Shown here: piece by piece, positions 6,988-51,052 of the stretch
How the letters are laid out: each line of letters begins with the position of its first letter
How positions within the stretch are numbered: the stretch's first letter is position 1
Source: Podarcis vaucheri
Lineage: Eukaryota
DNA: 64,000 nt
Assembly (NCBI GenBank): GCA_965113315.1
Contig: OZ220364.1
Direction: 5' to 3' (one strand)
The notes under the pieces: model-generated
What the model saw: only the letters and a program-made list of their open reading frames with translations
What the model was told of the DNA's origin: nothing
The model's database searches: none
Program-made: the position numbers and the translations under genes

Positions 6988-7187
6988 NNNNNNNNNNNNN
7001 NNNNNNNNNNNNNNNNNNNNNNNNNNNNNNNNNNNNNNNNNNNNNNNNNNNNNNNNNNNNNNNNNNNNNNNNNNNNNNNNNNNNNNNNNNNNNNNNNNNN
7101 NNNNNNNNNNNNNNNNNNNNNNNNNNNNNNNNNNNNNNNNNNNNNNNNNNNNNNNNNNNNNNNNNNNNNNNNNNNNNNNNNNNNNNN
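6988..7187. other. Assembly gap (200 N)
   Basis: Run of N. Confidence 1.
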
Positions 7188-29180: not shown

Positions 29181-29287
29181 CTGAACTTTCATTTCTCGGT
29201 CTGTATCCCAGATTCTTATAATCCGTACATCTCCAGAAGTCATGAGAAGGCCAGTTTCCTGTTCCCAGTCCACCACCATCCCTGCTC
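29181..29287 (-). CDS. RPTOR: RPTOR coding exon (~exon 29), (G)AGMVVDWEQETGLLMTSGDVRIIRIWDTDREMKVQ
   Basis: 107 bp; ttcctcag acceptor, gtaagc donor. Confidence 0.97.
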
Positions 29288-33500: not shown

Positions 33501-33765
33501 AGCATTTTAATATTTGTTGTGGTTTCTGATCATGATGTTGTGAAGCTCCCCCAGATCCAACGGTCCCCTCCATGACATTCTCACAGGGCTCATGATGCAA
33601 GGTACTGCTCAGGTACTAGAGAGCTTGCTGCTATGTGCTCATGAGGAAATCTGTAATGGAGCCTACTGCCACAATTTGTTCCCAAAGAGGCAAGGTTCAT
33701 GACAGCCGACATATTCTCACAGACACCACGTAAAATAACTTCCACCTTATTCCCATAAGGCATTA

Positions 33766-33974
33766 CAGTGGTACCTCGGGTTACATACGCTTCAGGCTAC
33801 AGACTCCGCTAACCCAGAAATAGTACCTTGGGTTAAGAACTTTGCTTCAGGATGAGAACAGAAATCGTGCAGTGGCGGTGCAGCGGCAGCAGGAGGCCCC
33901 TTTAGCTAAAGTGGTGCTTCAGGTTAAGAACAGACCTCCAGAACAAATTAAGTTCTTAACTCGAGGTACCACTG
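33766..33974. mobile_element. Tigger-like MITE family A
   Basis: TIRs, TA TSD, opposite orientation to 2473-2692. Confidence 0.88.
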
Positions 33975-36900
33975 TACATAAAGTTGAGTGCATAAGACAC
34001 ATGGCAGAAAGCTAATTTTAAAAATGATTCCTCTTGGCTTCTTCACGCAAGGACTAGCAGTTCTGCGTTATATGGAAGGGTATTTTTAAAATATGTCAGA
34101 CACTGGAACTTTCCTTGTAGGATTCCCCCTAAGTCAGAGATGCATCTCAGTGGAATAGTTCCCTGCATATGTTTCAGCAAAGAATCCTGGCATCAGAAAC
34201 AGCTGCATTCCAAATACATTCTATTTAAATCATGTCCCCCCCCCATCCCCTCTCCCAAAATCACTGCTGTATCACAGTCTTTGTCTAACTGGCGTTTTGA
34301 TTAGTTCAGAAATGTGTGCACAGGCCACAACACAACAGTATCCAAGAAAAGGAAAGCTGATCTTCTATACACCGCCCCCCCCCCCGGCTGATAAATGAGC
34401 CATGCCCCTGTTTTAATTTCCAGGCAGCAGTGGGGAGGCTGCATTACCTCATTATTCATTAATTCCTGAAAATGCCCCTTCAAGTGACACTCCTGTGCCA
34501 AGCATCACCCAAATGACAAGAGAAGACTCTCTAGAACACCGGGAGCCTTAATTTACCAAGTGAAAAGTGCCTCAAAATAGAGCTGCTGCTCCCCTAATTA
34601 CTTTATTTTCATAAAAGACCTGACCTCTCTCAAGGCATCATGCTCTGTCTCTGACTACAGAGGCACAACATAAGTTAATCCCACAGACCAATCAATGCTG
34701 GGATTCACCTACTGCCTTTTTAAAAAGAATAACACATCACCTCCTCATGAGACTCCTTCTGTCTCATCCATATCGTGGTGGATAATGAATGCACTTGGAT
34801 GCTGGTTCTGAGGCAGCACAAATGTGGCATGACATGCAGTTCTCCTAGACGTTTTCCGCCCCACAAAGCAGAGTTACTAAGGTCTCTCCTAGATGGAGCT
34901 TTAACACTGCCTTTTAAGTTCAAAATGTCTCCCTTACCAAAACAAAACTCCTTATTGTGTTCATTACTTAGTAGTATTCCTGTTCTCTGCCCTGCTTCTC
35001 TCCTTGCCCCCCCCCAAACTTCATCCCTCCAACTTTCTCACCCCTTACTCTTTAAAAAAAAAAAGGTACAAGACCTGATAACTTTTATGAGCTCCTGGGT
35101 TGGGGGAAGCTCCTAATCCCGCCCCAGGCCTTGCCTGGAGCTTCTTTGATTTGAACATTTATTTAATTATAAATTGGATTTTTAAGCACTGCTTACTTTA
35201 AGTGTCAGATTGAAGGGAATAAGACCCTCAGACTTGACCAGGGAAATCTGTCATTAATGTCTTTTGTGGCTTTTGTTTTGCTAATCAGCAGCCTCATGGG
35301 ACTGCTCTGAAGAGTGTGGAAGTGGTGCTCAGGGAGATTTGTAATTTTTTCCTTCCATACCCTACCCCTAAAGCAAACTCCCCCCTCCCTACATAAAGTC
35401 TGCTATAACTGGCATGGAGAAGACAGATGTGGACAGCAGCTCTCCCCCTAAGCTAATAGTGATAGGAGAAGAATTACATTGGAGAAAAAGCCATGGGATA
35501 GTGTTTAATAAATCTCTTTCTCCTGGAGTACTACTTCCCCACTCTTCAAAGCAGCCCCATGGGACCGCTAATTAGCAAATAAACTACAAAAGGTCCTAAT
35601 CACAGTTCTTCCAGGTCAAGTCTGGTTTGGACCTTAGAATGCATTAATTTCCCAGAAGCAATTGATGCAGTGGTATTTCCCTGGTAAATTTCTAAGGTTG
35701 TGGGAAGCAGGAGTGGGAGGTCTGGAGCACACTTTCTGTTAGTTGTGAGACTGAGGCAAGATGGAGGATAGCCTAAGAGGACACATTTACCACATTTGCT
35801 AAACTCCTTCAAATATCAGTACAACAACAAAAAGCAAACCCATTTACAGACAGCCCTGCATTGCCTTTAGCCATCATCCAGCGAGTGAGGAGAAATGAGG
35901 CTGGACCACATGGTTATGCTATTGTGATAGATACTATTGGTTGGCAATCTCACATCCCCAAATGGACCTTTTCTCACTTTTTTTGTTACATTTGACATAG
36001 AATAATGAATCAGAGACAAGGTTAGTCACATTTATCAGATGGGATGGCAGTGTCTTTGCACTTTATAATCTGGAGCAAATATTTCTGTGCTTTTTGCAGT
36101 CATTTTGCCACTCTGAAACTCTCCAACTCCTCACAGAAAGAAATGTGTTCTCAAAGACCTCAACAGGTGTGCCAGGCTGGCTCTGAAGCGGAGCTATCTA
36201 TCCGTGTGCTCCTGACAGATTGTTGCTTCCAAAGCATCATCAGTATTGATTCTCTATGGTGGTTGCAATAAGCTGGTTTGGTCCCCAGCCTATCAAAAGG
36301 AAACCCCTTCAGCCTCCACCCTTCCTAATTTTAGCTTTGTCAGCTTGCCAGCAAGTTTCTACAAAAGATGGGATGCTCATAGTAATCCATTGTATTTGCA
36401 CGTTCTTCTCCACTGCATCCCAATAACCAGAGAAAGTTTAAAGGCCCCCACCTAAGAGAAGCCTGAATCACAGAACACACAGCCACCTTTGTTCTGATAA
36501 TCACTGCAGACACATTCCAGCCCTTATCAACTAGTGAATATTAATAATTCATAGAGCGCCTAAGAAGATTACATCAGCTTTCTGACACATACCACACATA
36601 CCATGTCCTGTTGTGCCAGCCATCTGTCACTATCTCAAAAGCTGAAGCAACAGAGAAGGGTTTCAAGTCCCATCCCTCCACAGGTTTTTTCCCCCAGTCT
36701 CAGTCTAAAGAGCTAAATACATGCTTTACTGTAGGTTGGAAATGTTCAAAACCTTTTCCAGACAATTAATTGCCAAAGGCGGAAACCAACTTTCCAGATT
36801 GAAACAAGGTCACGCTTGCCATTTACTTCCACTCAGCATCCCATAATTACAAATCAAAGAAACGTAGCAGTCAACAAAGACGGAGGCATTTCACGAAGAG

Positions 36901-37369
36901 ATGCTCCAACATTCCAGACCATCTCTTGAACTGTTTAAGAGTAATGGTGGTGGCCGAGAAGCTGCTGTACCCTGAGCATGGCTGGCCTGCTGCGATCCTT
37001 GTATAAAGTGATCACACAACAATATTGCCTCTGCATATCTTGAAAACACTTTTTAATTCCCACATTTTGTGATCAGGCTCCCAAAGCGAAGGAAAATGCA
37101 CGAATCTCCTCTCTTTGCCTTTCTTCCACGTGGACACTTGAGGCCCATCTTGACAGAATATCAGATGTAGAAGCCCACACTGCATAGTACAGACAAGCAA
37201 TACAAAGCAAGGAATGGGAAGGCCAGGAGAAGCTAAGCTGCCTTCCAAGAATTAACAGGACCCAGGAGATGTTAGAAGGAATGCCATTTTAAAAACAACA
37301 ACAACACATATGATTAGAAGGACCACCCCTCCCGCGCTGATTGTAGGTAAGAGGAAAGAGAGCACTCAC

Positions 37370-37417
37370 CTCCCTGTTTACTTCTGTCAAGATAGATTGA
37401 AACCCTTCGGGCCAGAC
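37370..37417 (-). CDS. RPTOR: Candidate 48-nt alternative RPTOR cassette exon adding LARRVSIYLDRSKQGG
   Basis: tgtcttctcacag acceptor, GAG|gtgagt consensus donor, length divisible by 3, open in the phase-1 frame between exons 28 and 29; no transcript evidence available here. Confidence 0.65.
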
Positions 37418-38500
37418 CTGTGAGAAGACAGGGATTAAGGGGTTGATGCTAAGGGTAAGTTGGTCAGCCAAAGCAAAACAAATCTTAAAAAAAAGGATTA
37501 GGAAAAGCAACCCAAAAGGAACAGAAAAGAACACAGTTAGAGAGAAGCAGTAGCGGCAGAAAGGCCTCCATTCAGGGAAGGAAGGAAGGAAGGAAGACGA
37601 GTAGGTGGATCACAGCAGCCATCTTAGGAAGCCATTAGCCATGAGGAGGAAAGCAAGACCGGTCTTCTTTTGCTCATGTGCTCAAATCCCACTCAGAAGG
37701 GCCCTGCTATACTCTACCTAGAATGAAAGGCACCTTGCTGTCAGCGGAGGAGCGAGAAATGAAAGCTGCGCTCCAAATGACCCCTCACCAAAGAAAAACC
37801 CACAAAGAAACCCAACACCCTGTGAGGGGAGAGGTGAATCCAAACAGCCAAGCAATGTGCTGCTCAGGCCTCACTGAGCCACCAGCTCAGCTGTGAAGCA
37901 ATACAGTAGGCAGCAACAAAGCACACTTCAATGATTTGCTAATGAGCACTCATTCAGAGAGGAAGGACAATTTACAGAGGACTCTGCTCAAACAACTGTT
38001 TAAGTGGGGGAAATTAGCAGTACAAGGGGATTCATTTGAAGTCATCAGGAAGAAGGCTGGATAATGAGAGGAGCTGCAGGGTGGCGGCAGCAGCTCAGTT
38101 GTTAAGGACAGGGCAACTTAGGCACATTCCCAGCCTAGCTGCCCTTGGTTTGCCCAAGGAACTCTAGAAAAAGAACCTGCTTGACCTTTTCCAGGGCAGG
38201 ACTTGCATAGGCCACTCTCAAACACCATGGGCTCACCTTTAAAACAAGCCCCAAAACTGGGAGGAAGTAAAGCAGTGGTGATGGATGCCCTCAAAGAGCT
38301 CAAAGATGCACCAGTTGGAGGTGGCAGCCCATTCTCTACATTGCAAGGCATCACTTGTTCTGTACAGTGGTCTGAGAGCACCAGCCAGAGTACTTTATTT
38401 ATTTACATTTATATGCCACATTTTTTCTCCTTGGCTAGATGGACTGCCTCTCTGACCTCAGTGAAAGATGTTCCTTATGCTGTTGTTTTTCTTTTCTCTT

Positions 38501-41697: not shown

Positions 41698-41962
41698 CAA
41701 ACCTTACAAGTATGCTAAAGTTAAGATAATTTCTTTCTAGATTTTCTGATTGCAAATTCTGGATAAATTCATTGGTTTTGGTGGGGATAAGCAATAAAAA
41801 TAACAGAAAAATGGGAGAAGAGCATGTAGTGGCGCATAAGGAAGTCTAACAAAGTTCTAATTTTTCCTACGATGATTAATTCAGTGCTTGTTTTGAAATA
41901 CACGCACACACAACCCTCTGCCTACTGGGTAATCCAGCACTGGCTATGCTGATTCTCAAATA

Positions 41963-42188
41963 CAGTGATACCTCGGGTTACATACACTTCAGGTTACAGA
42001 CTCCGCTAACCCAGAAATGGTACCTCGGGTTCAGAACTTTGCTTCAGGATGAGAACAGAAATCGTGCTCCGGCAGCACGGCAGCAGCAGGAGGCCCCATT
42101 AGCTAAAGTGGTGCTTCAGGTTAAGAACAGTTTCAGGTTAAGAACGGACCTCTGGAACGAATTAAGTACTTGACCCGAGGTACCACTA
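41963..42188. mobile_element. Tigger-like MITE family A
   Basis: TIRs, TA TSD. Confidence 0.85.
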
Positions 42189-44366: not shown

Positions 44367-44471
44367 CGCGTGTTGTTGGTAGCATGTCTGACAAGCCCTG
44401 CCAGGCCGTTACCATCTCTGGATTCTTCTCCAAGTCAGCAAAGTTTTTCCACACCCTTATAGCACCATCAT
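44367..44471 (-). CDS. RPTOR: RPTOR coding exon (~exon 28), (D)DGAIRVWKNFADLEKNPEMVTAWQGLSDMLPTTR(G)
   Basis: 105 bp; ttcaag acceptor, gtaggt donor; visible in ORF 44320..44559. Confidence 0.97.
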
Positions 44472-47315: not shown

Positions 47316-47440
47316 CTGTAGCAGTCAGGAGCAGAGAACAGTCTTGTCCATTCAGATATTCCATGGCAGTGATCCTTGTGTAGCGTGGGTTCCCATTGTG
47401 AAAATAGTCCAGCTTTTCTCCCTTTTCCCAATCCCAAAAA
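47316..47440 (-). CDS. RPTOR: RPTOR coding exon (~exon 27), (C)FWDWEKGEKLDYFHNGNPRYTRITAMEYLNGQDCSLLLTAT(D)
   Basis: 125 bp; ttccag acceptor, gtgggt donor; frame continuous with both neighbours. Confidence 0.97.
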
Positions 47441-50989: not shown

Positions 50990-51052
50990 CAGTCAGGAGC
51001 AGAGAACAGCCTTGTTCATTCAGATATTCCATGGCAGTGATCCTTGTGTAGC
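50990..51052 (-). repeat. 63-bp intronic duplicate of part of RPTOR exon 27 (source 47322-47384)
   Basis: 61/63 identical by direct comparison, same orientation as the source. Confidence 0.95.

What the first reader, a model, noticed from the sequence alone, without database searches (positions are those of the whole stretch)
37370..37417. Candidate 48-nt RPTOR microexon adding a basic RRxS-containing loop to the Raptor WD40 region
Seen: in the middle of the 15-kb intron 28 the minus strand reads ...ggctgaccaacttacccttagcatcaaccccttaatccctgtcttctcacag|GTCTGGCCCGAAGGGTTTCAATCTATCTTGACAGAAGTAAACAGGGAG|gtgagtgctctctttcc. It has branch-point-like motifs, a long U/C-rich upstream region, a perfect gtgagt donor, 48 nt, and no stop in the phase-1 frame. 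Inclusion turns ...MLPTTRG-AGMVVDW into ...MLPTTRG-LARRVSIYLDRSKQGG-AGMVVDW. The flanks lack recognisable repeats and a UG-rich tract follows. Established: canonical 1335-aa human Raptor lacks this peptide; RRxS is the PKA consensus; PKA is known to phosphorylate Raptor at Ser791. Inference: a tissue-regulated microexon could act as a splicing switch that adds a phospho-regulated loop to mTORC1. I cannot tell whether it already appears in predicted isoforms of other vertebrates.
Basis: partly seen in the sequence, partly recalled or inferred. Interest (0 to 1): 0.8.

Follow-up and report, generated by a model that had tools for sequence, protein, structure and literature searches.

The report
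Conserved 48-nt alternative RPTOR exon
The 48-base segment is a genuine alternative exon of the Raptor (mTORC1) gene, conserved across bony vertebrates and already present in public gene annotations as a 1351-residue isoform, but its function has apparently never been studied.

Summary
On the minus strand, 37417..37370 is a 48-nt open segment with an AG acceptor and a GTGAGT donor. It lies in the 15-kb intron between two Raptor WD40 exons (44471..44367 and 29287..29181). Read in phase 1 it inserts LARRVSIYLDRSKQG plus a rebuilt Gly.

It is not a chance pseudo-exon. Of the 411 proteins retrieved, 90 carry this peptide or a conservative variant, and 89 of them have it directly after ...DMLPTTRG. 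Carriers are the annotated 1351-aa isoforms of lizards, snakes, alligator and birds, one cetacean (LARKVSIFLDRSKQG) and a teleost gene model (16/16 identical). Forms with and without the exon are annotated in the same species, so it is an alternative cassette exon. A 6.5-kb contig encoding a full 1352-aa Raptor with the insert can only be spliced cDNA.

AlphaFold2 places the insert in a low-confidence loop between two propeller strands.

The exon is therefore real and deeply conserved, but already annotated (for example XP_028570571.2), so it is not new. Tissue regulation and the PKA/RRxS phospho-switch idea remain untested. The one reads test gave no usable data. No paper in the library describes the isoform.

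The parts
37370..37417 (-). 48-nt alternative cassette exon of RPTOR (phase 1 to phase 1). It encodes (G)LARRVSIYLDRSKQG(G).
   Evidence: Sequence and frame. The identical peptide sits at the same junction in annotated 1351-aa Raptor isoforms.
37418..37441 (-). Acceptor region: pyrimidine-rich tract cccttaatccctgtcttctcac followed by AG (37419-37418), with yUnAy branch-like motifs at -21 and -7.
   Evidence: Acceptor score in the top 9 of 4497 AG on this strand. Motif positions.
37364..37369 (-). Donor site GTGAGT; with the exon end it reads GAG|GTGAGT.
   Evidence: Donor score in the top 5 of 3450 GT on this strand.
37349..37362 (-). CU-rich tract (CTCTCTTTCCTCTT) at +8 to +21 after the donor. 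It is a candidate site for a pyrimidine-tract-binding splicing regulator (inference only).
37290..37308 (-). UG/U-rich tract (TGTGTTGTTGTTGTTTTT) at about +62 to +79 after the donor. It is a candidate intronic splicing element (inference only).
44367..44471 (-). Upstream constitutive RPTOR exon (105 nt), ...DDGAIRVWKNFADLEKNPEMVTAWQGLSDMLPTTR + first base of Gly. Equivalent to human Raptor 1089-1124.
29181..29287 (-). Downstream constitutive RPTOR exon (107 nt), AGMVVDWEQETGLLMTSGDVRIIRIWDTDREMKVQ. Equivalent to human Raptor 1125-1159.

Best explanation
This is a genuine, evolutionarily old alternative cassette exon of RPTOR. When it is spliced in, via acceptor 37419-37418 and donor 37369-37364, the reading frame is kept. 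Sixteen residues, LARRVSIYLDRSKQG plus a rebuilt Gly, are inserted between the equivalents of human Raptor Gly1124 and Ala1125. That position is the loop linking the last strand of one WD40 blade to the first strand of the next. The result is the 1351-aa Raptor isoform that public annotations already list beside the 1335-aa form. The loop is predicted to be flexible and exposed. Its invariant core, R-[RK]-V-S-I-[YF]-L-[DE]-R-S-K, has the form of a basophilic-kinase site or short linear motif. The most likely role (inferred, not shown) is an isoform-specific regulatory or docking site on the Raptor propeller, not a change to the core mTORC1 architecture.
For: Shown:
- Canonical, top-ranked splice sites and an open frame.
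- Of 411 retrieved proteins, 90 carry the peptide, and 89 of them have it directly after DMLPTTRG. Counts: 84 with the identical peptide, 3 LTRRV... (Sphaerodactylus), 2 ...YLERSKQG (Crotalus tigris), 1 LARKVSIFLDRSKQG (Pseudorca crassidens XP_067571980.1).
- Carriers include Podarcis muralis X3 XP_028570571.2, Apus apus X1 XP_051491087.1, Alligator mississippiensis X2/X3/X6 and Crotalus adamanteus A0A0F7Z7I6.
- The teleost model KAI4894127.1 (Prochilodus magdalenae) has the identical 16 residues joined to the downstream exons. Its neighbouring exons are only 94%, 88% and 71% identical to the window.
- Isoforms with and without the insert are annotated in the same species, for example P. muralis X3 (1351 aa) and X4 (1335 aa).
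- P0299 is a complete 1352-aa Raptor ORF with the insert on a 6498-nt Logan contig. That can only be spliced cDNA, because the last 363 codons alone span about 39 kb in this window.
- All 11 peptide segments encoded in the window, the exon included, are exact substrings of annotated squamate isoforms.
- In the AlphaFold2 model the propeller has pLDDT about 80-93. Residues 687-707 (insert 692-706) are below 50, between strands 674-680 and 711-715.
Against: - There is no direct RNA evidence from this organism. Two bulk RNA runs of a sister species laid 0 reads on 36400-38400, and the tool calls that 'no test'.
- Many bird entries ('RPTOR protein, partial') are probably homology-projected models, so the count of 90 overstates the number of independent observations.
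- Whether the exon is used in mammals beyond one predicted cetacean model, or in amphibians and sharks, was not tested.
- The functional part (phospho-site or docking motif) rests only on motif form and conservation.
- No orthologous DNA was available, so selection on the peptide could not be separated from selection on an RNA element.
Confidence: 0.93

Rival explanations
1. It is a chance pseudo-exon: an intronic AG...GT pair with an open frame that is never used.
For: Introns hold many decoy sites. No reads were laid on it.
Against: The identical peptide occurs at the identical junction in 89 database Raptor proteins, from teleost to cetacean, and in a cDNA-type contig. Neutral intron sequence would not keep 16/16 residues between a fish and a lizard.
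Confidence: 0.01
2. It is a real exon with little protein-level function. Its conservation reflects an RNA-level or regulatory role, or tolerated low-level inclusion, and the RRxS resemblance is incidental.
For: No paper describes a function. The loop is predicted to be disordered. R-R-x-S motifs are common by chance.
Against: The frame is kept. The only substitutions seen (A>T, D>E, R>K, Y>F) are conservative at the amino-acid level and keep the basic-basic-x-Ser core. The insert is at least as conserved as the flanking constitutive WD40 exons between fish and lizard.
Confidence: 0.25
3. In reptiles and birds the exon is effectively constitutive, so the 1351-aa form is the main one. The 1335-aa models would then be minor or annotation artefacts, and there would be no regulated switch.
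For: Many single-model bird annotations and transcript-type entries (P0299, Crotalus adamanteus) carry the insert.
Against: RefSeq lists both forms for many squamates, birds and alligator. Some species are listed with only the 1335-aa form, such as Ahaetulla prasina.
Confidence: 0.15

Closest known systems
Annotated 1351-aa Raptor isoforms of sauropsids (e.g. Podarcis muralis isoform X3 XP_028570571.2; Apus apus isoform X1 XP_051491087.1; Crotalus adamanteus A0A0F7Z7I6)
   Same: They have the identical 16-residue insert at the identical TTRG|AGM junction. All the window's C-terminal exon peptides are exact substrings of several of these proteins.
   Different: Nothing differs at the protein level. 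This window is simply the genomic locus of the same exon in a squamate whose species name is coded.
Raptor isoform lacking 158 residues (the 1177-aa form listed for many birds, reptiles and mammals; from memory, called RAPTOR_v2 in human)
   Same: It is another alternative-splicing product of the same gene that changes the protein without breaking the frame.
   Different: That form skips several exons in the HEAT/linker part and is described in the literature (own knowledge). This exon is an inclusion event in the WD40 propeller, with no paper found.
Neural SRRM4/nSR100-dependent microexons
   Same: Both are short, frame-preserving, deeply conserved cassette exons that modify a surface loop of a signalling protein.
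   Different: This exon is 48 nt, not 3-27 nt. There is no UGC within 57 nt of the acceptor and no GCAUG within 400 nt. Tissue specificity is unknown.
PKA site Ser791 of Raptor (PMC6529218)
   Same: Both are an R-R-x-S type basophilic motif in Raptor. PKA phosphorylation of Ser791 inhibits mTORC1 signalling without changing in vitro kinase activity.
   Different: Ser791 lies in constitutive sequence outside the insert and has been shown experimentally. The insert's Ser is only a sequence match.

Membership tests
Alternative cassette exon of RPTOR (1351-aa isoform) | Canonical AG acceptor and GT donor flanking the segment | tested here: met
   cag|GTCTGG...GGGAG|gtgagt. Both sites rank at the top of the window.
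Alternative cassette exon of RPTOR (1351-aa isoform) | Length divisible by 3 and no stop in the frame set by the upstream exon | tested here: met
   48 nt; phase 1 gives G-LARRVSIYLDRSKQG-G.
Alternative cassette exon of RPTOR (1351-aa isoform) | The same peptide at the same exon junction in orthologous proteins | tested here: met
   89 proteins have DMLPTTRG + insert, and the teleost model has the insert joined to the downstream exons.
Alternative cassette exon of RPTOR (1351-aa isoform) | Both inclusion and skipping forms exist in one species | tested here: met
   At annotation level only. Examples: P. muralis X3/X4, Eublepharis X1/X2, Grus americana X3/X4, Alligator.
Alternative cassette exon of RPTOR (1351-aa isoform) | Spliced RNA containing the exon | tested here: met
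   P0299 is a 1352-aa full ORF with the insert on a 6498-nt contig, so it is cDNA from a gecko-like relative. It is not from this organism.
Alternative cassette exon of RPTOR (1351-aa isoform) | Junction reads in this organism or its sister species | tested here: inconclusive
   0 reads laid from two RNA runs; the tool states 'no test'.
SRRM4-type neural microexon | Length of 27 nt or less | tested here: not met
   48 nt. The length limit is from my own knowledge.
SRRM4-type neural microexon | UGC motif just upstream of the acceptor | tested here: not met
   The nearest UGC is at -58. The defining motif is from my own knowledge.
SRRM4-type neural microexon | Neural-specific inclusion | not testable with these tools
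   No usable tissue RNA-seq.
Poison (NMD) exon | Introduces a stop codon or a frameshift | tested here: not met
   In frame, with no stop.
PKA/basophilic kinase substrate site | R-[RK]-x-S/T followed by a hydrophobic residue | tested here: met
   RRVSI. The variants keep it (RKVSI in Pseudorca). This is a sequence match only.
PKA/basophilic kinase substrate site | The serine is actually phosphorylated | not testable with these tools
   No paper in the library prints the peptide.

The most novel reading that the evidence does not exclude
The 16-residue insert is an ancient, isoform-specific regulatory module of mTORC1. It would be an exposed loop on the Raptor propeller whose invariant R-[RK]-V-S-I-[YF]-L core is phosphorylated by a basophilic kinase (PKA, or an AGC/CaMK-type kinase) or docks a partner. 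Splicing would then decide whether mTORC1 in a given tissue can receive that input. It would have been overlooked because the reference 1335-aa form used in nearly all work lacks it.
Probability: 0.25. Interest if true: 0.6.

Novelty: already known. Interest (0 to 1): 0.3.

Why it matters
As a discovery it does not hold: gene annotation pipelines have already found this exon in dozens of species. It still flags a gap in knowledge. A Raptor isoform whose insert is identical in a teleost gene model, lizards, snakes, alligator and birds, and near-identical in a cetacean, has no functional literature in the library searched. Structural and biochemical work on mTORC1 uses the 1335-aa form (the PDB Raptor chains are based on it). 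An isoform-specific, kinase-motif-bearing loop on the propeller would be a cheap hypothesis to test for anyone working on mTORC1 regulation in non-mammalian models or in specific mammalian tissues.

Tried and rejected
- Reads: the look-up of sequencing runs found no holder on record as RNA. Read laying laid 0 reads from two bulk RNA runs of a sister species, which the tool calls 'no test'. Two small runs of guessed kind showed only scattered 170-250-nt genomic pieces at depth 3-5, none over the exon. I first suspected those runs marked a conserved or captured element; the laid pieces reject that.
The fish contig and orthologous introns could not be fetched, so there is no DNA-level conservation or dN/dS.
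- First isoform searches: the search with the fish fragment found only that fragment, because of the length filter. Ranking on the junction region showed only canonical forms, because insert-bearing forms score lower there. Ranking on a variable region solved this.
- Literature: nothing on this isoform or its peptides.
- Motifs: no RBFOX GCAUG within 400 nt, no acceptor-proximal UGC and no QKI site.
- Repeats: no repeat or transposon origin was found within the window.
Exons were searched one by one, by reference. The only joining was a 51-nt local translation inside my own scripts to check the frame.
- Human sequence: no human DNA was searched. Human Raptor appears only as PDB chain numbering.

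Full report
**1. The observation**

In the frame imposed by the upstream exon (phase 1) it translates to G-LARRVSIYLDRSKQG-G with no stop.

The flanking exons are also as stated. The upstream exon, 44471..44367, ends ...MLPTTR plus the first base of a Gly codon, with donor gtaggt. The downstream exon, 29287..29181, begins GA GCA GGG ATG, which reads AGMVVDW.... Searched separately against solved structures, they match human Raptor residues 1090-1123 and 1125-1159 of chain 5h64_B. The insertion point is therefore the equivalent of Gly1124|Ala1125 in the WD40 propeller.

tblastn with squamate Raptors maps residues 973-1335 onto the window's minus strand, from 51501 down to 12039.

**2. Is it more than chance?**

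I used a rough splice-site matrix, with frequencies from my own memory, only to rank sites inside this window. The donor is among the top 5 of 3450 GT dinucleotides and the acceptor among the top 9 of 4497 AG on the minus strand. It is the only pair of that quality within 9-300 nt on either strand.

That alone would not be convincing. No tandem repeat or intra-window repeat covers the segment.

**3. Expression test**

The single sequencing-run search found DNA holders:
- One organism holds 100% of the sampled words and is probably the source.
- Sister organisms hold about 70%.
- No holder is on record as RNA.

The single read-laying run used two bulk RNA runs (raw reads) of the sister organism and two small runs of guessed kind. 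The RNA runs laid 0 reads on 36400-38400, which the tool itself marks as 'no test'. The small runs held scattered 170-250-nt genomic pieces at depth 3-5, none over the exon.

The 6,000-letter limit prevented laying a flanking exon together with the candidate, so there was no internal expression control. This line gave nothing either way.

**4. Conservation and annotation: the decisive line**

*First hit, a teleost.* A profile-free search of 1.84 billion representative proteins with the downstream exon's 35 residues returned many short fragments. Inspecting what precedes AGMVVDW in each showed one, P0024, that reads ...SASCFS-LARRVSIYLDRSKQG-G-AGMVVDWEQETGLL... and continues through the next Raptor exons. 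It is NCBI KAI4894127.1, a partial hypothetical protein of the characiform fish Prochilodus magdalenae. tblastn against the window gives these identities:
- the candidate exon: 100% (16/16)
- the three downstream exons: 94%, 88% and 71%

Its first 40 residues match nothing in the window and look like a model artefact of a partial contig.

A search restricted to fragments of similar length found no further carrier. A search ranked on the junction region showed only canonical forms, as expected, because an insert lowers that score. Many squamate 1335-aa forms there were labelled isoform X2 to X4, which implies longer isoforms exist. Ranking instead on the most variable part of Raptor (residues 860-960 of Podarcis muralis X4) brought up the closest relatives with all their isoforms. 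Many of them were exactly 1351 aa.

*Counts.* Of the 411 proteins then in hand:
- 122 have the canonical ...DMLPTTRGAGMVVDW junction.
- 90 carry the insert:
  - 84 have LARRVSIYLDRSKQG.
  - 3 have LTRRVSIYLDRSKQG (Sphaerodactylus townsendi).
  - 2 have LARRVSIYLERSKQG (Crotalus tigris).
  - 1 has LARKVSIFLDRSKQG (the cetacean Pseudorca crassidens, XP_067571980.1).

*Carriers* include:
- Lizards: Podarcis muralis X1/X3 (XP_028570571.2), P. raffonei, Zootoca, Anolis carolinensis and A. sagrei, Sceloporus, Tiliqua, Varanus, Salvator, and geckos.
- Snakes: Pantherophis, Pseudonaja, Naja, Thamnophis, Vipera, Crotalus.
- Crocodilian: Alligator mississippiensis X2/X3/X6.
- Birds: many species, for example Apus apus X1 (XP_051491087.1), which represents a 950-member cluster.

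*Alternative, and seen in cDNA.* Both forms are listed for the same species, for example P. muralis X3 (1351 aa) and X4 (1335 aa), so the exon is annotated as alternative. All eleven peptide segments encoded in the window, this exon included, are exact substrings of several annotated squamate isoforms. P0299 is a complete 1352-aa ORF with the insert on a 6498-nt Logan contig. Its nearest relatives are geckos, at 99.6%. The last 363 codons alone span about 39 kb of genome here, so that contig must be spliced cDNA, which is direct transcript evidence from a relative.

*Caveats.* Many bird 'RPTOR protein, partial' entries are probably homology projections, so the count overstates independent support.

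**5. What the insert looks like in the protein**

I folded a 918-aa partial bird Raptor that carries the insert (P0370), using a 66-sequence alignment (A1). The propeller strands have pLDDT about 80-93. Residues 687-707, which include the insert at 692-706, are below 50 and lie between strand 674-680 (EMVTAWQ) and strand 711-715 (VVDWE).

The insert therefore lengthens an inter-blade loop and is predicted to be flexible. By general knowledge of WD40 repeats this is the loop from strand D to strand A of the next blade (inference). I could not determine which face of the propeller, or which mTORC1 neighbour, it points to.

**6. How it probably works**

Shown: it is a frame-preserving cassette exon whose peptide is almost invariant from teleost to mammal. 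The only changes seen are conservative (A>T, D>E, R>K, Y>F), and all keep the basic-basic-x-Ser-hydrophobic core.

Inferred: a flexible, exposed, strongly conserved loop with an R-[RK]-x-S-hydrophobic motif is most simply a regulatory phosphorylation site or a short docking motif present only in this isoform. PKA is a reasonable candidate, because it phosphorylates Raptor Ser791 and thereby dampens mTORC1 signalling (PMC6529218). Any basophilic kinase would fit the motif equally well.

Splicing control is unknown. There is no GCAUG within 400 nt and no UGC within 57 nt of the acceptor. A CU-rich tract lies directly after the donor (37362-37349) and a UG/U-rich tract at 37308-37290. These suggest pyrimidine-tract or UG-binding regulators, but that is speculation.

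**7. Comparison with what is known, and novelty**

The exon is the one already present in RefSeq, Ensembl and UniProt models of many species, so as a sequence feature it is already known. It is not an SRRM4-type neural microexon by length or motif, and it is not a poison exon.

Five literature searches, including searches for the tryptic peptides, found no paper that describes this isoform. Its function appears to be unstudied. That absence applies only to the library searched.

**8. Procedural notes**

Exons were searched singly, by reference. The only joining was a 51-nt local translation in my own scripts to check the frame. No human DNA was searched. The N run at 6988-7187 was left alone.

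**9. Verdict**

The exon is real, alternative and deeply conserved, but already annotated. The phospho-switch idea is plausible and untested. Interest is modest.

Noticed in passing
window 50990-51052 compared with 47322-47384: A 63-nt copy, 96.8% identical, of the 3' half of the RPTOR exon at 47439..47317 lies in an upstream intron. It translates to YTRITAMEYLNEQGCSLLLTVS.
   Followed up: partly
window 33764-33933 and 41961-42130 (extending to about 33976 and 42190): Two copies (91% identical over 170 nt) of a dispersed repeat lie on either side of the exon in the same intron. The sequence recalls a squamate SINE (recollection only, not tested).
   Followed up: no
P0160 (Salvelinus sp. Raptor isoform X3) and P0322 (Bubo bubo): Different short inserts are annotated at exactly the same TTRG|AGM junction: QPSSSAHS in the salmonid and RFPLR in the owl. 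They may be alternative acceptor use or model artefacts.
   Followed up: no
Raptor residue ~840 (outside the window); P0212, P0305, P0398 and others: A second alternative insert of 25 residues (IMQVRVRLDYRLKSQQLPSAGDLVH in Salvator) would account for the 1360-aa and 1376-aa squamate isoforms. By length, it combines freely with the 16-residue insert.
   Followed up: partly
   Followed up: no
cluster of P0336: A 298-aa 'endonuclease V isoform X1' of Muntiacus reevesi (P0384) sits as a member of the 90% Raptor cluster. It is probably a clustering or annotation oddity.
   Followed up: no
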